Origin: Caecitellus pseudoparvulus
Taxonomy: Eukaryota > Protista > Bigyra: Bicosoecida
Assembly: GCA_965644315.1 (NCBI GenBank)
Contig: CBFFRQ010000051.1
Location: 62,001 to 126,000 of the forward strand
Length of the DNA stretch: 64,000 bases
Direction: 5' to 3'
Part shown: positions 18,760 to 27,140 of the stretch, piece by piece
Layout of the letters: every line of letters begins with the position of its first letter
Numbering within the stretch: the stretch's first letter is position 1
Notes under the pieces: generated by a model
The model's input: only the letters and a program-made list of their open reading frames with translations
What the model was told of the DNA's origin: nothing
Database searches by the model: none
Program-made: the position numbers and the translations under genes

Positions 18760-19909
18760 ATGGCCCTGCGCGTGTCAGGCAAGACTGTGCTTGGGGCTGC
18801 GGTGCTGGGGGGGGCAATCGGGGGCATCGGGGGGACTGCCTTCCATCAAGTTGCTGCAAAGATCCCTGGCCGGTTCATCCATGACCAGCCCTTTGCTCCG
18901 GCGGGAGCTGGAGCGCTTGTGGGTGCTTGGTGCGGGTGAGTGCTGCTCAACATGCCATGAAGCCATTCGCGCGCCCCACTCAGTCCTCTTGGTTGTGCAC
19001 CACAGTGTCTGGTATCCCTTGCACGCTCGATTGATGGCTTGGTTCAAGCGCAAGCGGACTTCTTCGCGCGCAACGGTGCGAGTGGCGTTCGAGTGAAACG
19101 CCAGCGAAACACTTGCCCCTTGCATCGGCCGCCCCCACCCCCTGCAGAGGCTATTTCTGAAAGTCATGCTGGACACCATACCCAGCACAGTTGTGTCCAC
19201 CGTTGTGGCATTCTGCATTGTCTCTGCTGCAGCCCGGACGGATGCCTTCATGATTTCAGTGCACGGCTTGGGGCTGCCGCCTTCAGCATCCCGTGAAGCT
19301 GCTGCGCGGTACGCGAAAGCCACCGCGGAACTGGCAGCAGGACAGCCCAGGCCAACTCGCCAATATGCCGACTGCCCTACACAGCAGCAGCTGGAGGCTT
19401 GGGGTGCATGGGTGCGGCAGATGGAGAGCACGGCAGCCCCAGGCTCGGCCCTGCACGAATGGGGTCCGAAAGACGTCTGCACCAGTACCTTCTACCCCCG
19501 CGCCCTGGCCCGGGCCGCGCACCACCCCCAGGAAAGTCCCCTGCGAGACCCCAGCGTAACACGCCAGGCGCTACAGGTAGGCGGTGCGCACGGCCTGGTG
19601 GCACTGGATGCTCGGCGCCGGGCGCTGTCCCAGGCCTGGTACATGACCAGCACTGGTGCCTGGTGGCCTCTGTGGCTCGTGGGCTCGGCAGTTGCCTTCC
19701 TTGCCGTGCCCCCCCCCGTTCGCCCGCTGTGGGGTGTACTGCAGTGGTCCGCAGTCAACGCACTGGCTCACTACCACCCGCCCGGCACGCACGGCTACGC
19801 ACCACCAGGCCACAAACCACGCGTCCCACCAGGCAGCCCGGACGATGAGGGCCCCCCAGAGGCGTCTGCCACTCGCAGAGGCGGAGGCAGCAAGCCCAGC
19901 ATGGTGTGA
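18760..19909 (+). CDS. Membrane protein, divergent Mpv17/PMP22-like (3 exons)
   Basis: In-frame splicing gives hydrophobic segments, LFLKVMLDT, and C-terminal WWPLWLVGSAVAFLAVPPPVRPLW, resembling Mpv17/PMP22 motifs. Confidence 0.45.
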
Positions 19910-19983: not shown

Positions 19984-22900
19984 TCACAGCAAGTCCTCGG
20001 CATCGTCAGGGTCCTCGAAGCCGCCTGCGATGCGCTGCAAGAGCGCGGGGGGCAGGGGGATGAACAGCCGCTCCAGCCCGCCGCCCCCCTCCGTGCGCTG
20101 GGTCGCGACCAGGGCGTGGTCGGTGAACTCCACCAGCACGTTGCGGAAGGCGATGTCGGTGCTCACCAGCATGCTGTCTTGGCAGGCAGCGTACCATTCG
20201 TCCCACACCATGCCGCCCTCCTCGGGGTTGTCCAGCTGTTCTTGCGCGAGGATGGCCAGGATGGCGCGGTGGTTGGGGGTGAGGGACTTCAGAACGTATG
20301 CGACGCCCGTCTTGGCTGTGCTCTCGCGTTCCGGCAACACACTCGGAACATGGGGCGCCTCGCTCGCATAGCGCTTGAAGGCACTGCAATCCACGTGCAC
20401 CCACCTTCCCAGCTCACGCGCTTGCCCGCTCATCAGCACGCCTGCGTTCACGTGGTCGGTGGATGCGACCAGCTGCAGACGAGGGCACGCCGCCAGGATG
20501 GCCAGGCCTGCCTGTGCCTCAGGAGACCGGAATCCGTGCCCGTCCAGGTTGTGCAGCACCAGGCACAGCGTCCGGCCCGCAGTGCTCACTCGGCAGGTGT
20601 CCACGACGGCAGCCAGCTTGGAGACGGCGACACCCCCCACACGCCCACGGCGGCCCAAGGCATCCAGGTCCAGGCCTTGGCCCCGCACCACTCGAGCGGC
20701 ACCCGCCGTGGCACCTGCTGCCTGGACGGGGGTCCAGTCTTCACCCTCCTCCTCCGCGTCGCTGCGACCGCCGGCCGAATCTGAGCCACCCTCATCATCG
20801 CCAGCCGCCGACGCGGCTGCCGCAGGGCTCGGCCCAACGACACAGCTGCGCCGAGCTCGTTTGGCAGCCAAAGCTGTGCGGCGCCCCTTGTCGGGGTCCT
20901 GGGTGTCATCGCTGGAGCGTGCGACCTGCTTGCGGCGGCGCTTGCGACCGCCGGCTTTCACGGCCGCCGTCGGACCAGGCTGGCTCGCGTGCTCGTCACG
21001 CCCTGCACTGGCAATGTGCAGGGTAGATGTGGTGTCTTCATGCCCTGCAGATGCAGTGAGGGTGATGGGGGGCGCTGGCGGCAACCCGGCAAGGCGTCGC
21101 CAGTGACGGGACAAGTGCTGGCGGATGAACCTGTACTGGTGCTCCTCCACGTCCTCTGAGGCCAGGAGAGGGGGGTTCCCTGCGCGGTCTCCCATGAGGA
21201 GGTCCGGGTCCACTGCTCGGTTGGTGGGGTCCAGCTGGGGCAGTGCTCGAGGGGGGGCAGTGGAGCCCCGCCGACCGCCTGTTCCGCGTCCCCGCCGAGC
21301 GTGCGCTGAGGCACTGTCGCCCGCCACGTCCTCCAGGGGGTCGAAGGCGGAAAAGCCCCCCTCGTACACCTTCACCCCGCCCAACACTAGGCGCTTCTGC
21401 ACTTCCAAGCCATCCTTTGATCCCCCCAGCACCACCTGCAAGCTGCCCTGCGCATTCACTGTCAGCCCCATGGTGTGCAGCGCAGAGGGAACGGCACTGG
21501 ACCCACTGGCCCACAGGCTTGGTGCCGCGCTTGCACGCTGCAAGCTGGTCCACGTTGACGCGTCAGTGCTGGAGCTGGTGCCGGCGGGCGACGCATCGCC
21601 CCCCATGCACGCGGCGACGAAGCGGCAGTGGTCCAGAACAGAGGCGAACGTGGACGTGCGCCCCAGGAACTTCTTGCAAATGAGGTTGCACAGCCCCTTC
21701 AGGGTCACTCCAGGCGTGTACCCATTCACCACCAGCACCGACGCCTCGTGCACCAGCGTGCCGGCAAACTCCTCAAGCAGCGCCTTCTTCGAGCCGACGC
21801 CGTACGCGAGAATGCTGCGCCCAGACGTCAGTAGGGACCGCCAGTGCCCAAACTGCTCACGAATGTGCCTCGTCAACACCGCTGTTCCGACCTTGTTCCG
21901 ATCTGGCAAGCTCGCCACGACCTCGTCCGCCTTGGCGTCAGAAGGCAAGCTGCCAATGTCCACAGCGCGCTCGCTGGGACGGGCGCGCTTGCCGCGAGAC
22001 GCGCCACCCGGAACCGTGAGGCGGTGGTGTGTGAAGAACATGTCTTGATAGGCTGTGTGGGAGCGTGCAGTGGGGGTAGCCCTGCGACGGCGCCGCCCAG
22101 CGCCGTGTTCATGGTCGGCAGTTCGGCCGCGCTGCCGCGGAAATTCGCTGTCCGAGTCATCGCCGCTGCCAGCCGTACCACCCTCTTCATCAGAAGACAT
22201 AAGAGCAGTGGGTGTGGGCAGAGACAGCAGGCTGTCTGGGTTGAGGCTCATGTACACCTTGCCTTCGCCCTGCCCGCCCACTGGTAGTGCGTGTTTGGCG
22301 GTTTCTTCGTCCGCCAGGGCTGTCTGCGCAAGGTGGGACGGCAGGCACACCATCTTCCCAGCCTTGTGTCGCTTCTCGGCACAGGTACTGCAGAACCAGT
22401 CCCCCGGAGGCACCGCTGACAGCGGGGGGTCAGCACAAGCCAAGTGGCACACAGACTCACACGCGTCGCACACGACCATGAGAGCAGCATTGTCCGTGCC
22501 ACGGCACACGACACAAGGTGCCGATGTGTCCACCGCTGCCGTTGTGCTGTGTTTGGGGCAGTACGCGAGCTTAGCGACTTCCCCCTCGCCTTCCTCTGCA
22601 TCCCCCTGGTGCAGCGCCATCTCCACGTTCGCGCGAATGCCGCACAGTGGGTGGAAAGCCGCACAGCACGTGCCAAAACAGCACTGAATGGGAGCGCCCC
22701 GTGAAGAACTCGCACGCTCCAGCAGGGCTGGCCCTGCCCAGAATGCCTTCTCACCGACCCGCCCACCAGACGTCTTCAGCGGCGCCTTGGCACTGTACTT
22801 CCACCGCAGTGTGCCCTTCTTGTACCAACAAGTGTCTGGCGGGAACACGCCCCTGCCAGCCTCTGCCTTGCGCTTCTTGCACAGCGTGCACGGCAAGTCC

Positions 22901-24928
22901 CAGCGCTCCGGGTGCACAGTGGCCAGGCCACACGGGAAACTCAAACCCTCTGCATCTTTGAAGAACATGCCTGGCGTCCACAGCGCACAGCCAACGTGGC
23001 ACCAGGCAACAATGCCCCCATTAAGACCACCATCATCGCCGCCAGGGGTTTCGGGGGTAGCTAGCGGTTTCAGCGCCCGGTTTGAGCGGATGGGGCACAG
23101 AACACACTTGGGTGCCTGCACGCCCGCCCTGCACGCCTCACACACGAAACCTGAGGTCGGAATAGGACCAGGCACTCCTGGTAGCTGTTTGGCATCGGGT
23201 GGGCTGTCTGCATCGGGTTCGTAGAATCGAGGCTCAGGCCCAGGCGTGCTGCGCTGCGGTACCGCTGGCACTCTGTGCCTGCCATCGCTCGACAAGTCCA
23301 CACCAAAGCACGCCTCGTGCACACCGAGTCCGCAGCACTCACACACCACTAGGGGCGAACCCTTGTCCCCTGCACACCCACACACGCCACACTCAAGGTC
23401 CTCGCCAACGGAGATGAGGACACCCCTGCCATCGCGAGTCTGGGGTGGTTTCTCTTGCTGTACAGTTGCGGGCGGGGGTGCAGTGTCGCTTGGCTGACTC
23501 ATGGCACTCGAGCTGGCCTTCGCCAATTGCACGAGCAGTGCAGCTGCACTGCCCTTGGGAGGGCGCGATCGCTTCTTGCCTCCTGAGCGCTTGCCGTCAC
23601 TGGCTTCTGAGACTGCAGCGTCACCGCTCTTGCCCGAACCAGCCTTGCTACCACTGGCCTTGCCCGAACCAGCCTTGCTACCACTGGCCTTGCCAGCACC
23701 AGCCTTGCCACCACTGGCCTTGCCCGAACCAGCTTTGCCACCACTGGCCTTGCCCGAACCAACCTTGCCCGAACCAACCTTGCCCGAACCAGCCTTGCCA
23801 GCAGTGGCCTTGCCCGAACCAGCCTTGCCCGAACCAGCCTTGCCCGAACCAGCCTTGCCAGCACTGGCCTTGCCCGAACCAGCCTTGCCCAAACCAGCCT
23901 TGCCAGCACTGGCCTTGCTCGAACCAGCCTTGTTTGCACTGCTCTCCTCGACCTCTAGCTGAGCAGGCACAGCGTCACCGAGCATGCCGCCCAACTGCTC
24001 TTTGGCAGTGCTTTGCAGCATCTTCGCTGTGGCCTTGCGCTGGCGGCGTGATACGCGTTTCGCCGAGGACATGTCTGCTGGCGCCGATGACGGCACACTG
24101 GCAGTGTCTGTAGCGGGACTGGAGGCTGCTTGTGCCAGTCTTCGGGCGCGAGAGGCCTGCTTGAACGCGGCAGCGGACAGAGCAGGGGAGGTGGCCGGCT
24201 GCTCGGTCAACCCGAACGTGTCATCGGCAGTGTTCGCAAGACTGCGCCGGCCCTGGCTGCGGTAGGTAGCAGCCTGCTGCAAGAGTGCGGAAGACTGCCC
24301 TGCTCGGGCAGAGCGGTGCATGGCATGTGCGGCACGGCCGACAATGGAGCTGGGTGTGTGGGGCGGAGTGGAGGCGTGGTGGGATGGAGTGGACTTCGCA
24401 GACAACGGGCGACGAGACGCTGGGAGTCTCTTCCCTCGGCGCTTGGGCGTGGAGGGCGCCTCAAAGTCGAATTCGTCCGCCGCCTTTGGGCTGGGAGCAG
24501 GGTTTGCTGTTTGGACAGGAGTTGGTGGGGTGACACCAGTCACGCCAGAAGGGACGGAGGTCACCCCATCATTCGGAGAACCTGCGCAGGGTAGCATTAT
24601 GGGTATGTGGCTCTGTATAACGTGGTTTACTGGTCGTAGCGAAGGCTTGCAGTCTTGAACAGCGCAAGGTGTGTCAGCGGCGCTGTCGCTCAAATGCCGC
24701 ACAACCACACGCACGCTGCTCGGAGCCAGGGAGACTTCCTGCAACCCGTTGGAAGCGCCTTCGCAGAGGCTTTCCTGTGGAGGTCGGGACTTGACTTTCG
24801 ACATCCCCAAGGGAGGACAGCTTGCTCCCAGATGTGAGGGGCTTTGCCGGCACAGCAGGTTCGGTGTCTGCAGCCAAGTCTGAGGCGCCCGTGCTTCCCC
24901 TGCGGCGGCTCAAGCGTCGTGCAGGCAT
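19984..24928 (-). CDS. ORC2: Origin recognition complex subunit 2 with N-terminal PZP (PHD-Zn knuckle-ePHD) and an extra PHD finger
   Basis: ORC2 motifs: QFGHWRSLL...SILAYGVGSKKALLEEF, VLVVNGY, LVLHNLDG, LVASTDHVNA, YVLKSLTPN, EFTDHALV. Upstream Cys/His zinc modules lie in the same stop-free frame. Exon 1 from ATG 24928 joins through intron 24582-24714. Confidence 0.9.
23620..23934 (-). repeat. Coding minisatellite, 15-bp unit x about 21, encoding (G/S)K(A/V)(G/S/T)(S/A/G)
   Basis: Repeated cttgcccgaaccagc / cttgccaccactggc units on the + strand; translation GKAGS GKASA GKAGL... Confidence 0.95.
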
Positions 24929-25129
24929 GCTGAGGGGAGGATTACTCAATGGTGCACAAAGTAAAGGTGCGAGTGTGTCTTGAGCCTCACGTGGCGGGAG
25001 CCAACTGAGCCTCTTCCTCGCCCGATGAGCTTCGCAATTTCCGCAGGCACCTGGCAGCTGCAAGGACGCTTGGACAGTGCTAGGACGGTAGAGGGGCTGG
25101 GAACAAAGCTGGCCAAGCTAACCTAACCA

Positions 25130-25173
25130 GACTTCCCCAGATTCCCCTCTAAATTTTCATGGGTGTCAAGTTT
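25130..25173 (+). promoter_or_regulatory. Candidate bipartite element GACTTCCCCAG-N23-TGTCAAGTTT in a divergent promoter
   Basis: Second copy of the element at 3566-3609; lies between ORC2 and MVK. Confidence 0.35.
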
Positions 25174-25319
25174 GACGCTCGACGGCAAGTGGCCTGGCGC
25201 GGCAATCTTCCGGACTTCGCCATATTCCCCGTGCTCACCACCACCACATCCTGCATGTAGGCCAGGCTGGAGCCAGTGCAGGGCGCAGGCAAGCACGTGG
25301 ACATCCACCCACCGCCAGC

Positions 25320-27140
25320 ATGGCCAGCCCAGCACCGACCGCACCACACGCACGCGCCTCGGCGCCGGGCAAGCTCATCCTCTTTGGCGAGCATGCCGTG
25401 GTCTACGGCAAGACAGCCGTGGCAGGCGCCTTGTCGGACTTGCGTGTCTTCGTCCGAGCGGTGCGTCGTGAGGCCCTGCCTCCGTCTGCAGGCCGGCATC
25501 GCACGCTTGCGCGTGCTCACACAGGACGCGACACGGGACGGCGCCTTGACCATCAACATCCCCGCCTTGGTGAAGGGGGCTCAAGATGTGGCTCTGACAT
25601 GGCCTCTGGAAAGCCTAGATGGGCCTGTCATGCAGGCTCTGGCTGCGTGTGGTGCGTGCAGCGCCACTGCGTGCCGCATACCACTGCGCCATGCAAGCTT
25701 TGTCGCCGGGCACCCTGCGCAGATGCACGCAAGGCCGTGCAGCCCATTCCTGGCGTGTGTGAGGCGTTGGAGAGTTTGTGCACAGAGTACGACCCTCTCA
25801 TCCGAAAGGCCATCATTCCCACTGCCTTCCTGGCTCTTGCAATGGTGGGAGGGCATCTTCGGCGTGAAGGTGCAAAATCCGCAACCTCCTGCACTGGCCT
25901 CGCGGTGCACATTGAAAGCGACACCAGCACCTTACCTGTAGCAGCAGGGCTAGGTTCTAGTGCCGCCTTCTCAGTGGCCACGGCAGCTGCGCTTCTGGCC
26001 CTGTTCCGGCAGCTGGAAGGCAAAGGCATGGCCGGGGAGCCAGCAGGTGCTGCTGGCGCTCCACACACACCACTGGCTGGCGAGCCCGTGGTGGTGCCCT
26101 CTGAAGCGTCCCTGTCCCTCATCAACGCCTGGGCGTACTCTGCCGAGACGCTCTTCCACGGTGCGCCATCAGGCCTGGACAACACGGTGTCCACGTATGG
26201 CGGCGCCATCGCGTACCGCAAGTCGCCCCAGTACATCCACCGTGTCCAGGACATGCCGCAGTTGCCGATCCTGGTGACGAACACGAAGGTGCCGAAGGAC
26301 ACCAAGGCCCTCGTGGCGGGGGTGCGCACGCGGTACGACGCCCACCCCACCATTGTCGCGCCCATCATCGACGCAATTGAGGAGGTGTCCAACGCCTTCC
26401 TTGAGCAGGTGGAGCACCACGCCGTGACCACCGCCGACGCACGCCGCCTCATGGTGGGCGCCTCAGCCGACGGCAGTGAGATCGCGCACGCCTCCAACCG
26501 GGGCACCTCCGCCCAAGGCAGCGGCGGCCTCTCCAGCCCTGTGCCCACAGAACCCGGCCGCCCTCGTGTCCGCACCGTGTCCTGGGATGCCGCCGCCGGC
26601 AGCCTCGTCGCAGACACACAGCAGCTCATCCACATGAACCAGGGCTTGCTGGACGCACTGGGGGTGGGGCACCCCGCCATTGACGCCGTGCGCGCCACTG
26701 CTGCGCGCGTGCTGCCTGGAGCGGCCACCAAACTCACCGGAGCAGGTGGAGGTGGCTGTGCCTTGACGCTGCTGCCCGAGGGGGTGGGGGCGGAGGGGGG
26801 TGACGCGCTCGTGCAGGCCCTGGAGCAGCTCAGCTGGGCATCAGGCAAGCATGGCGCCCATGTGCCCTTCGTGTGTGTGCGTACGGCCATGGCTGGTGCA
26901 GGCGTGCTGGTGGAGCAGCCGTGTCTTGTGTCTGCAGCCGCCTCGGCTGAGCAGGCAGACTCTGACGTCACGACCGGCGTGTACGTGTCGCGGCGCCGGG
27001 CTGCCCTCATTGCCGCAGACAAGCGGCGCCGAGAGGAGCGGAAGCACTTGACGCACTTCATCGTGCCGCTGGGCCTGGCACTGTCGGTGGGGGCAGGTTT
27101 GTTGAAATCCTGGCTGGGCAAGGCCGCAGCACCGGCATGA
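25320..27140 (+). CDS. MVK: Mevalonate kinase (GHMP family), 3 exons
   Basis: SAPGKLILFGEHAVVYG, LPVAAGLGSSAA, HGAPSGLDNTVSTYGG, KLTGAGGGGC. Introns 25461-25524 and 25652-25722 restore the frame. Confidence 0.92.
   Translation: MASPAPTAPHARASAPGKLILFGEHAVVYGKTAVAGALSDLRVFVRAVRREALPPSAGRHRTLARAHTGRDTGRRLDHQHPRLGEGGSRCGSDMASGKPRWACHAGSGCVWCVQRHCVPHTTAPCKLCRRAPCADARKAVQPIPGVCEALESLCTEYDPLIRKAIIPTAFLALAMVGGHLRREGAKSATSCTGLAVHIESDTSTLPVAAGLGSSAAFSVATAAALLALFRQLEGKGMAGEPAGAAGAPHTPLAGEPVVVPSEASLSLINAWAYSAETLFHGAPSGLDNTVSTYGGAIAYRKSPQYIHRVQDMPQLPILVTNTKVPKDTKALVAGVRTRYDAHPTIVAPIIDAIEEVSNAFLEQVEHHAVTTADARRLMVGASADGSEIAHASNRGTSAQGSGGLSSPVPTEPGRPRVRTVSWDAAAGSLVADTQQLIHMNQGLLDALGVGHPAIDAVRATAARVLPGAATKLTGAGGGGCALTLLPEGVGAEGGDALVQALEQLSWASGKHGAHVPFVCVRTAMAGAGVLVEQPCLVSAAASAEQADSDVTTGVYVSRRRAALIAADKRRREERKHLTHFIVPLGLALSVGAGLLKSWLGKAAAPA

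What the first reader, a model, noticed from the sequence alone, without database searches (positions are those of the whole stretch)
19984..23391. ORC2 fused to a JADE/BRPF-type PZP chromatin reader plus a third PHD finger: possible direct histone-guided origin selection
Seen: one stop-free frame carries PHD1 (CGVC..CECC..HEAC..CEAC, from about 23391), a Zn knuckle (CVLC..HVGC), an extended PHD (CTLC..CCFGTC..FHPLC..YCPKH, to about 22548), a canonical PHD (CVVC..CDAC..HLAC..WFCSTC, about 22515-22380) and a complete ORC2 domain. Established: PHD-knuckle-ePHD is the PZP nucleosome-binding module of JADE/BRPF/AF10. JADE and BRPF scaffold the HBO1/KAT7 acetyltransferase that associates with ORC1 and promotes licensing. 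Chromatin readers in ORC normally sit on ORC1 (BAH, plus PHD in plants); the ORC2 proteins I know have none. Inference: this is a Rosetta-stone fusion that wires nucleosome reading directly into ORC2. I cannot confirm that it is undescribed.
Basis: partly seen in the sequence, partly recalled or inferred. Interest (0 to 1): 0.85.

Follow-up and report, generated by a model that had tools for sequence, protein, structure and literature searches.

The report
ORC2 carrying histone-reader zinc fingers
This protist's only ORC2 gene (a core part of the machine that marks DNA replication start sites) also encodes three histone-reading zinc-finger modules, an arrangement shared by a small group of related protists including Blastocystis and apparently not yet described in the literature.

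Summary
One open frame (window 19984-24804, minus strand, about 1606 aa) encodes five parts in order. First comes a roughly 470-aa disordered N-terminus with 20 GKAGS repeats. Next is a complete PZP module (PHD1, Zn knuckle, extended PHD), then a BAZ2-like PHD finger, then an acidic linker. Last is a full ORC2 (RecA-like domain split by a ~330-aa loop, plus winged helix).

It is the only ORC2 in the 30.6-Mb genome. It is not a mis-join or a two-gene artefact:
- Independent assemblies keep the same frame.
- Every non-repeat segment, linker included, shows dN/dS of 0.5 or less (0-0.18 from the N-terminus through the insert).
- A relative's transcript and the NCBI Blastocystis gene model carry the same architecture.

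About ten lineages below 50% identity share the fusion, and nine of them fall with the window in one supported ORC2 clade. It is therefore lineage-conserved, not unique to this genome.

ORC1 here and in its closest kin lacks BAH/PHD. A more distant fusion-bearing relative keeps a BAH on ORC1, so the fusion came before that loss.

The HBO1 "Rosetta-stone" reading is not supported, because there is no HAT-binding EPcA/EPL1 region. The likely role is tethering ORC to nucleosomes through the H3 tail. I found no published description.

The parts
19984..24804 (-). Whole coding region of the PZP-PHD-ORC2 gene. Stop codon at 19984-19986. First ATG at 24804; alternative ATG at 24597, which is the start of the orthologous ORF in L023.
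   Evidence: Bounded by a divergent MVK-like gene starting at 25320 (+) and a convergent ORF ending at 19909. The same neighbours flank the gene in L023 and L001.
23404..24804 (-). N-terminal low-complexity region (aa 3-469). No Pfam domain. Contains a short conserved DEFDF..P.TP motif near aa 118-130.
   Evidence: no family; alignment with P0004; dN/dS 0.15 outside the repeat.
23629..23932 (-). 15-nt tandem repeat, about 20 copies, encoding GKAGS-type pentapeptides.
   Evidence: It varies in sequence and length against the 97%-identical kin L023 (dN/dS about 1.2, 15 gapped codons) and is absent from P0004.
23131..23391 (-). PZP PHD1 (C474, C477, C490, C493, H498, C501, C557, C560) with a ~48-aa proline-rich loop inserted before the last Cys pair.
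   Evidence: aligned to Jade-1 PHD1; loop residues 38-79 of the model have pLDDT below 50.
22987..23106 (-). PZP zinc knuckle (C569, C572, H605, C608).
   Evidence: Jade-1 alignment; ligand columns nearly invariant.
22549..22890 (-). PZP extended PHD (C641, C644, C710, C715, H720, C723, C751, H754) with a ~55-aa disordered loop.
   Evidence: zf-HC5HC2H_2, zf-HC5HC2H.
22381..22515 (-). Canonical C4HC3 PHD finger of BAZ2A/BAZ2B type, with no aromatic cage.
   Evidence: PF00628, 39.9 bits; BAZ2A PHD at 1.2e-14; rmsd about 1.5 A to BAZ2A PHD bound to unmodified H3K4; no non-synonymous change against L023.
22066..22380 (-). Acidic linker. It includes the conserved motif Y..L....LP.P.ALMSSDE at aa 853-878 (window 22177-22254).
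   Evidence: invariant columns across all fusion proteins; dN/dS 0.18; a similar motif in the PZP-less kin P0012.
21604..21930 (-). ORC2 RecA-like domain, first piece (Pfam profile positions 16-126).
   Evidence: (aligned to human ORC2 residues 61-147 of 5uj8_E).
20605..21603 (-). ~330-aa insertion inside the ORC2 RecA-like domain. No Pfam family. It is coding (dN/dS 0.09) and its length varies among relatives (absent in Blastocystis).
20230..20604 (-). ORC2 RecA-like domain, second piece (Pfam profile positions 123-251).
20050..20232 (-). ORC2 winged-helix domain.
   Evidence: PF24882, 47.8-50.2 bits.

Best explanation
Window 19984-24804 (minus strand) is the single ORC2 gene of a GC-rich, intron-poor protist, probably a bigyran stramenopile. 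Its product is a genuine ORC2 with a long N-terminal extension. In order, the parts are:
- a disordered lysine/serine-rich region
- a JADE/BRPF-type PZP module
- a BAZ2-like PHD finger
- an acidic linker with a conserved LPxPxALMSSDE motif
- the ORC2 RecA-like and winged-helix domains

Shown:
- the domains and their fold
- continuity of the coding frame
- purifying selection on every non-repeat segment
- conservation of the architecture in a clade of relatives
- uniqueness of ORC2 in the genome
- absence of BAH/PHD from this genome's ORC1 and of reader domains from its ORC4

Inferred:
- The PZP (H3 N-terminal tail through PHD1, DNA through the extended PHD, as in BRPF1 and JADE1) and the extra PHD (unmodified-H3K4 type) anchor ORC to nucleosomes.
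- ORC2 would then supply the chromatin-tethering function that the ORC1 BAH domain (animals, yeast) or BAH-PHD (plants) supplies elsewhere.
- In the window's own sub-clade, where ORC1 has lost BAH, this would be the main folded histone-reading device of ORC.
For: - Domains: Pfam; PDB sequence matches to Jade-1/Jade-3/BRPF1 PZP and to human ORC2 at 1.3e-39; AlphaFold model whose top 16 Foldseek hits are all PZP structures, with PHD3 superposing on BAZ2A PHD bound to H3K4me0 at about 1.5 A.
- One gene: the same uninterrupted ORF is present in independent assemblies L023 (97% aa), L001 (41%), L002 and L029.
- Selection: dN/dS against L023 is PZP 0.03, PHD3 0, linker 0.18, ORC2N 0.085, insert 0.09.
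- Transcript and annotation: the transcript-derived complete ORF P0007 and the NCBI Blastocystis model P0093 hold PZP + PHD + ORC2.
- Boundaries: the flanking genes leave no room for extra exons.
- Clade: nine of the ten other fusion proteins form, with the window and two PZP-less proteins, one ORC2 clade with SH-aLRT 97. 140 other ORC2 representatives and 15 metagenomic ORC2 loci lack PZP/PHD.
- Genome context: a single ORC2. ORC1 is AAA+ and lid only, with a YL1 gene immediately upstream, and the only BAH in the genome lies elsewhere. ORC4 is plain. The closest ORC1 kin also lack BAH.
Against: - An internal start giving an ORC2-only isoform cannot be excluded.
- GC3 is lower in the N-terminal half (0.58-0.67) than in the ORC2 domains (0.81-0.85), and this is unexplained.
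- Histone binding is inferred from homology only.
- In the window's sub-clade the acidic residues that BAZ2A and most relatives have before the PHD beta-strand are mostly replaced (TDNAA instead of GDNDE), so K4me0 specificity is uncertain here.
- PHD1 and the ePHD carry long loop insertions.
- Relative P0007's organism keeps a BAH on ORC1, so the module is not simply a BAH substitute.
- Two clade members (P0012, P0026) lack the module, so it is dispensable in some lineages.
Confidence: 0.6

Rival explanations
1. The fusion is real, but the reader modules serve a non-licensing role of ORC2, such as heterochromatin, centromere or silencing functions or mitotic chromatin binding, rather than origin selection.
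For: - From established knowledge: ORC subunits, ORC2 included, have replication-independent chromatin roles in animals and yeast.
- Unmodified-H3K4 type PHD fingers typically mark non-promoter or silent chromatin.
- Two clade members do without the module, and a relative keeps the ORC1 BAH as well. Both facts argue that the module is accessory.
Against: - This is the only ORC2 in the genome, so whatever the module binds will also position replicative ORC.
- ORC1 and ORC4 here carry no recognisable folded reader.
- No data separate the two roles.
Confidence: 0.2
2. Rosetta-stone reading: the PZP derives from a JADE/BRPF scaffold and recruits a MYST (HBO1-like) acetyltransferase directly to ORC2, coupling histone acetylation to licensing.
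For: - The closest solved PZPs by sequence and fold are JADE1, JADE3 and BRPF1.
- The genome encodes two MYST acetyltransferases.
- From established knowledge: HBO1 associates with ORC1 and Cdt1, and JADE and BRPF3 complexes promote licensing and origin activation.
Against: - In JADE and BRPF the HAT is bound by the EPcA/EPL1 region, not by the PZP. No EPL1 or other family is found in aa 1-469.
- The only EPL1-like hit in the genome is weak (22.8 bits, below cut-off) and lies on another contig, not next to a PZP.
- PZP modules also occur in AF10, PHF14 and NTO1, and in four other genes of this genome.
Confidence: 0.08
3. Gene-model artefact: two adjacent genes (a PZP-PHD protein and ORC2), or an assembly mis-join, that happen to share an open frame in a GC-rich genome where long stop-free frames are common.
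For: - Many 200-400-aa spurious ORFs overlap the region in other frames.
- The genome does contain introns (split MYST gene).
- GC3 steps up at the linker/ORC2 boundary.
- No RNA data were available.
Against: - The frame is kept across the junction in orthologues at 41-46% identity, and in far relatives at roughly 26-38% identity.
- The linker holds invariant residues and has dN/dS 0.18.
- A TransDecoder complete ORF from a transcript (P0007) spans all the domains.
- Independent metagenome contigs reproduce the join.
Confidence: 0.04

Closest known systems
Canonical ORC2 (human ORC2, PDB 5uj8/7jpo; Drosophila 4xgc; yeast 5v8f)
   Same: RecA-like ORC2 domain and C-terminal winged helix. It aligns to human ORC2 at 1.3e-39 over both halves and is the sole copy in the genome.
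   Different: Known ORC2 proteins have only a disordered N-terminus. This one adds a PZP, a PHD and a ~330-aa insertion in a RecA loop.
JADE1-3 / BRPF1-3 PZP modules (scaffolds of HBO1 and MOZ/MORF acetyltransferases)
   Same: PHD1, Zn knuckle and ePHD order, all zinc ligands, and the best sequence and fold matches.
   Different: No EPcA/EPL1 HAT-binding region, bromodomain or PWWP. Two long disordered loop insertions. Fused to a replication-initiator subunit.
Plant/green-algal ORC1 with BAH-PHD (Arabidopsis ORC1b, PDB 5hh7; PMC7058166)
   Same: An ORC subunit that acquired a PHD finger reading the H3 tail. ORC1b PHD is among the PDB hits of PHD3.
   Different: A different subunit (ORC1, not ORC2), a single PHD beside a BAH rather than PZP + PHD, and an independent acquisition in a different supergroup.
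ORC1 BAH domain of animals (H4K20me2) and yeast (nucleosome binding)
   Same: Proposed equivalent function: a folded histone or nucleosome reader that tethers ORC to chromatin.
   Different: Unrelated fold and a different subunit. In this genome and its closest kin ORC1 lacks BAH.
BAZ2A/BAZ2B PHD fingers
   Same: PHD3 is 40-46% identical to them and superposes at about 1.5 A. It has the same extra Cys before the His ligand and no aromatic cage.
   Different: The acidic GDNDE stretch is reduced to GTDNAA in the window's sub-clade. The protein context is different.
ORC4 with PHD finger in Ascomycota (ESM-Atlas cluster, 713 members); S. pombe Orc4 AT-hooks
   Same: Precedents for targeting modules added to ORC subunits other than ORC1 (the S. 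pombe case is from established knowledge).
   Different: A different subunit and module. I did not examine those proteins further.

Membership tests
ORC2 (origin recognition complex subunit 2) | RecA-like ORC2 domain (PF04084) above the curated cut-off | tested here: met
   170.9 bits against a 25.1 cut-off, profile positions 16-251 in two pieces.
ORC2 (origin recognition complex subunit 2) | C-terminal ORC2 winged-helix domain (PF24882) | tested here: met
   47.8-50.2 bits against a 27.3 cut-off. Aligned through the human ORC2 WHD.
ORC2 (origin recognition complex subunit 2) | Orthology: the single-copy ORC2 of the genome, nested among ORC2 proteins in a tree | tested here: met
   Only one locus in G000. 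It groups with ORC2 representatives.
ORC2 (origin recognition complex subunit 2) | Assembly with ORC3 and the rest of ORC, and helicase loading | not testable with these tools
   ORC1, ORC3 and ORC4 genes are present. No biochemical data.
PZP module (PHD - Zn knuckle - extended PHD) | Full set of zinc ligands in the order C4HC3, C2HC, C5HC2H-type | tested here: met
   The ligand columns are invariant or nearly so across the fusion proteins, and they align to Jade-1.
PZP module (PHD - Zn knuckle - extended PHD) | Integrated PZP fold | tested here: met
   Foldseek ranks 1-16 are all PZP structures, target TM 0.62-0.83 for the stand-alone PZP crystal structures (0.26-0.27 for the longer NTO1 chains), E down to 5e-13. 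Model cores have pLDDT 70-90 and the loops are disordered.
PZP module (PHD - Zn knuckle - extended PHD) | Binding of the histone H3 tail and nucleosomal DNA | not testable with these tools
   Inferred from homology only.
JADE/BRPF family (MYST acetyltransferase scaffolds) | EPcA/EPL1 region that binds the MYST enzyme, N-terminal to the PZP | tested here: not met
   No Pfam family in aa 1-469 at E<=1. The genome's only EPL1-like hit is sub-threshold and lies elsewhere.
H3K4me3-reading PHD fingers (ING/BPTF type) | Aromatic cage (Trp/Tyr before the His ligand) | tested here: not met
   PHD3 reads C-E-S-V-C-H, with no aromatic residue. Its best matches are the unmodified-H3K4 readers BAZ2A/B, PHF21A, AIRE and ATXR5.

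The most novel reading that the evidence does not exclude
In this stramenopile clade ORC is positioned on chromatin mainly through ORC2. A PZP plus a BAZ2-like PHD read unmethylated H3 tails and nucleosomal DNA, and in the window's sub-clade this route has replaced the ancestral ORC1-BAH route. Replication origins would then be specified by a histone-tail state read by a subunit that, as far as I know, carries no histone-reader domain in the model organisms studied.
Probability: 0.3. Interest if true: 0.8.

Novelty: new variant of a known kind. Interest (0 to 1): 0.6.

Why it matters
How ORC chooses sites in organisms without sequence-specific origins is an open question. The known folded chromatin readers of ORC sit on ORC1 (BAH, and BAH-PHD in plants).

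This is a lineage-conserved ORC2 that carries a complete nucleosome-binding PZP and a further PHD, in a clade whose nearest members have lost the ORC1 BAH.

It gives a directly testable prediction: ORC occupancy and origin use should follow the H3-tail state bound by these modules. It also covers Blastocystis, a common human gut protist. In addition, it corrects the impression that ORC2 N-termini are only disordered.

Tried and rejected
- **RNA evidence.** No transcript evidence from this organism was obtained.
- **Profile search.** A word-indexed search with the alignment of fusion proteins (A2) returned only four proteins and no new fusion.
- **Organism names.** Paper searches for GECG01, GILJ/GILK, GCA_024449685 and JAANST found nothing usable, and PMC5482393 is not held.
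- **Placement of the organism.** An ORC1 tree places the window only weakly (SH-aLRT 69) near Cafeteria and the GECG transcript.
- **ORC1 search.** Cdc6_C (PF09079) gave no hit in the genome. ORC1 was found through the lid-domain families instead.
- **Bacterial promoter/terminator scan**: irrelevant for a eukaryote and ignored.
- **AP2-like insert in P0007/P0008.** There is no Pfam or PDB sequence hit and only non-significant Foldseek hits. I kept it as a passing note only.
- **Recent duplication rejected.** The PZP is not a recent copy of the genome's bromodomain-PZP gene on C94, because similarity is confined to the ligand-bearing cores.
- **Intron hypothesis rejected.** The ~330-aa insert in the RecA domain is not an unspliced intron: dN/dS is 0.09 and blocks are conserved in orthologues.


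Full report
**What is there**

The window is 60-70% G+C. Between 19984 and 24810 the minus strand carries one 1608-aa ORF (1641 aa stop to stop). The in-frame ATGs upstream of the zinc fingers are at 24804, 24597, 24321, 24072, 24021, 23985 and 23502. The orthologous ORF in a 97%-identical relative starts at the equivalent of 24597.

The gene is boxed in by two neighbours. A divergent 606-aa GHMP/mevalonate-kinase-like ORF starts at 25320. A convergent 247-aa ORF ends at 19909. Related contigs have the same neighbours, so there is no room for further exons.

**Domains**

Pfam on the whole ORF and on four sub-pieces gives:
- PHD_2 at aa 485-510
- zf-HC5HC2H_2 and zf-HC5HC2H up to aa 755
- PHD at aa 766-810
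- RecA-like_ORC2 in two pieces: aa 961-1069 (profile 16-126) and aa 1403-1527 (profile 123-251)
- WHD_ORC2 at aa 1527-1587
- nothing in aa 1-469 or in the ~330-aa stretch that splits the RecA domain

Sequence and fold comparisons agree with Pfam:
- phmmer against PDB sequences aligns PHD1, the knuckle and the ePHD colinearly with the Jade-1 PZP (1.4e-13), followed by Jade-3, BRPF1 and NTO1.
- The ORC2 half aligns with human ORC2 at 1.3e-39. The insertion falls between residues 147 and 157 of chain 5uj8_E, which is a loop.
- An AlphaFold2 model of aa 470-815, built on a 12-row alignment, has mean pLDDT 67.7 and pTM 0.64. The folded cores score 70-90 and two loops are disordered: model residues 38-79 inside PHD1 and 184-217 inside the ePHD.
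- Foldseek against the PDB returns only PZP structures at ranks 1-16: JADE1, BRPF1, AF10, NTO1 in NuA3, and PHF14. E-values go down to 5e-13; target TM-scores are 0.62-0.83 for the stand-alone PZP crystal structures and 0.26-0.27 for the much longer NTO1 chains.
- The same search places BAZ2A/BAZ2B PHD fingers on PHD3 at about 1.5 A and 40-46% identity.

**Is it one gene?**

The case therefore rests on comparative evidence, which is strong.

(a) Independent assemblies carry the same uninterrupted frame. These are L023 (97% aa), P0001's contig (99%), L001/P0004 (41%, 1562 aa with the full PZP + PHD + ORC2), L029/P0006 and L002/P0002.

(b) Codon-level comparison with L023 gives these dN/dS values:

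| Segment | dN/dS |
|---|---|
| PZP | 0.03 |
| PHD3 | 0 |
| Linker | 0.18 |
| ORC2 N-piece | 0.085 |
| Insert | 0.09 |
| Non-repeat N-terminus | 0.15 |
| GKAGS repeat | about 1.2 |

Only the repeat looks unconstrained.

(c) The linker contains invariant residues across all fusion proteins: Y853, L856, LP.P.ALMSSDE at 864-875, and G877/G878 (GG).

(d) P0007 is a TransDecoder "complete" ORF from a transcriptome contig (GECG01013680.1) and holds PZP, PHD, ORC2 RecA and WHD. P0093 is NCBI's gene model KAK8789958.1 of Blastocystis sp. Blastoise and has the same set of domains in 575 aa.

A mis-join or a chance open frame over two genes is therefore very unlikely. An additional ORC2-only isoform from an internal start cannot be excluded. 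One oddity remains: GC3 is 0.58-0.67 from the N-terminus to the linker, but 0.81-0.85 in the ORC2 domains.

**How widespread is it?**

An exhaustive phmmer search of 1.84 billion cluster representatives with aa 470-1608 found 110 proteins at E<=1e-30. I re-scanned the 150 listed hits with the individual segments and with Pfam.

- The window's own cluster and seven further representatives carry PZP and/or PHD3 together with ORC2: P0003, P0007, P0008, P0009, P0081, P0088 and P0093.
- P0002, P0004 and P0006 come from the first search.
- 140 hits have ORC2 only.
- Of 16 metagenomic ORC2 loci fetched with a junction alignment, only the already known L029 has PZP/PHD upstream. The others do not, including six with 2.7-5 kb of upstream flank.

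In a maximum-likelihood ORC2 tree of 153 rows, nine of the ten other fusion proteins, the window and two PZP-less proteins (P0012, P0026) form one clade with SH-aLRT 97. Blastocystis P0093 sits on a very long branch elsewhere, without support (32).

P0012 and P0026 really do lack the module in their ORFs and flanks. P0012 nevertheless keeps a linker-like "LP..HMSSSSSD" stretch and an N-terminal "DIFDFPATPP" motif that recurs at aa 118-130 of the window protein.

The simplest reading is a single ancient fusion with some later losses. The tree cannot prove this because it is unrooted and Blastocystis is unstable in it.

**Which organism?**

Nothing names it.
- Earlier scan notes call the genome a marine heterotrophic stramenopile. 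I did not check the specific features those notes cite.
- My ORC1 tree puts its ORC1 with weak support (69) beside Cafeteria, the GECG transcript and environmental sequences.
- The sharing of the fusion with Blastocystis fits a bigyran stramenopile.
- The closest named ORC1 proteins are only 43-45% identical (Hondaea, Cafeteria).

**Rest of ORC and related genes in this genome (G000, 30.6 Mb)**

- ORC2 is single-copy.
- ORC1 is a 610-aa ORF on C41 with AAA+ and ORC1-type lid domains. It matches human ORC1 at 1.6e-70 over aa 191-598. Its first 192 aa have no Pfam family, and a YL1 gene lies immediately upstream.
- The whole genome has one BAH match, on C66, in a gene that is not ORC1.
- The three closest ORC1 relatives (54-99% identity) also lack BAH in their precomputed Pfam lists. 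ORC1 of the GECG transcriptome (the organism of fusion protein P0007), of Cafeteria and of Hondaea all have it. The fusion therefore predates the BAH loss and coexists with BAH in some lineages.
- ORC4 is plain AAA + ORC4_C. An ORC3_N match exists.
- Two MYST acetyltransferase genes are present.
- Four other genes carry ePHD-type fingers, one of them with a bromodomain. It is only distantly similar to the ORC2 PZP.
- The only EPL1/EPcA-like hit is sub-threshold and not next to any PZP.

**Mechanism**

The domains, their fold and their linkage to ORC2 are shown. What they bind is inferred.

In BRPF1 and JADE1 the PZP binds the unmodified H3 N-terminal tail through PHD1 and DNA through the extended PHD. 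This is established knowledge, and the matched PDB entries 6u04 and 8ge0 are H3-tail complexes.

PHD3 belongs to the cage-less group that reads unmodified H3K4: BAZ2A/B, PHF21A, AIRE and ATXR5. Most relatives keep acidic residues before the first beta-strand (Blastocystis has KDNDE, as in BAZ2). The window's sub-clade has largely lost them (GTDNAA or GDAGGAA), so K4me0 selectivity is less certain here.

I therefore propose that the extension tethers ORC to nucleosomes. This is the job done by the ORC1 BAH in animals and yeast and by BAH-PHD in plants (PMC7058166). The lysine-rich repeat region possibly adds non-specific DNA affinity.

I give about 0.9 to "real, conserved fusion protein" and about 0.55-0.6 to "nucleosome tethering of replicative ORC through the H3 tail".

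**Rivals**

- An accessory, non-licensing chromatin role for ORC2: 0.2.
It is weakened because the HAT-binding EPcA region is absent and PZP modules occur in many unrelated proteins.
- A gene-model artefact: 0.04.

**Novelty**

The broadest ORC evolution survey I could read describes a PHD only in ORC1 of Chloroplastida; its seven mentions of PHD (main text, figure legend and reference list) all concern ORC1, and none concerns ORC2 (PMC7058166). No held paper combines ORC2 with zf-HC5HC2H, and none combines ORC2, PHD and stramenopiles beyond that survey.

The architecture is nonetheless present in public protein sets (NCBI, EukProt), so a domain-architecture browser would show it. Reader domains on non-ORC1 subunits also have a precedent: an ESM-Atlas cluster of 713 mainly ascomycete proteins has ORC4_C + AAA + PHD.

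I therefore class this as a new variant of a known kind, namely an ORC subunit with an appended histone reader. It is apparently undescribed and of moderate to high interest.

**Limits**

- There are no expression data.
- The organisms of most homologues are unnamed.
- The structure model rests on a shallow alignment.
- The trees used the quick search.

Noticed in passing
window 23629-23932 (minus-strand coding): A 15-nt tandem repeat of about 20 copies encodes GKAGS-type pentapeptides inside the ORC2 N-terminus. It differs in sequence and length from the 97%-identical relative L023 (dN/dS about 1.2) and is absent from P0004, so it evolves fast.
   Followed up: partly
G000:C41, locus L021:3805-5637 (+): The genome's ORC1 is a 610-aa protein with AAA+ and lid domains only. 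It has no BAH or PHD, and neither do its three closest relatives, whereas more distant stramenopile ORC1 proteins (Cafeteria, Hondaea, GECG transcript) have a BAH.
   Followed up: yes
proteins P0007:565-700 and P0008:20-135 (relatives, not the window): Two fusion-bearing relatives carry a ~110-aa insert in the ePHD loop that looks AP2/ERF-like by eye. Pfam and PDB sequence searches find nothing. A low-confidence model (pLDDT 58) has AtERF1 and WRINKLED1 AP2 domains as its top two Foldseek hits, but these are non-significant (E about 1.4).
   Followed up: partly
window 19984-24810: GC3 steps from 0.58-0.67 (N-terminus, PZP, PHD3, linker) to 0.81-0.85 (ORC2 domains) within one ORF that is under purifying selection throughout. 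This is unexplained.
   Followed up: no
window about 24420-24460 (aa 118-130) and 22177-22254 (aa 853-878): Two short conserved motifs lie outside the domains. DEFDF..P.TP also occurs at the N-terminus of the PZP-less relative P0012. LP.P.ALMSSDE followed by acidic residues is invariant in all fusion proteins. Both may be docking or phosphorylation sites.
   Followed up: no
ESM-Atlas cluster: A cluster of 713 proteins, mostly from Ascomycota, combines ORC4_C, AAA and PHD. This would be a PHD finger on ORC4, another non-ORC1 reader fusion.
   Followed up: no
protein P0088 (RYG56253.1): A eukaryotic PZP-PHD-ORC2 protein is filed in NCBI under an 'archaeon' MAG, and the ORC1-like P0256 is likewise labelled 'archaeon'. 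These are probably eukaryotic contigs mis-binned into an archaeal bin.
   Followed up: no
G000:C66, locus L016:5475-7803 (+): The only BAH domain in the genome sits in a 189-aa ORF that changes frame into a 714-aa ORF with a weak PAH (Sin3-like) hit. This is probably one spliced gene unrelated to ORC.
   Followed up: partly
window 24805-25319: A ~515-bp divergent intergenic region separates the ORC2 gene from a 606-aa GHMP/mevalonate-kinase-like gene (25320-27140, +). The arrangement is conserved in L023 and L001.
   Followed up: partly
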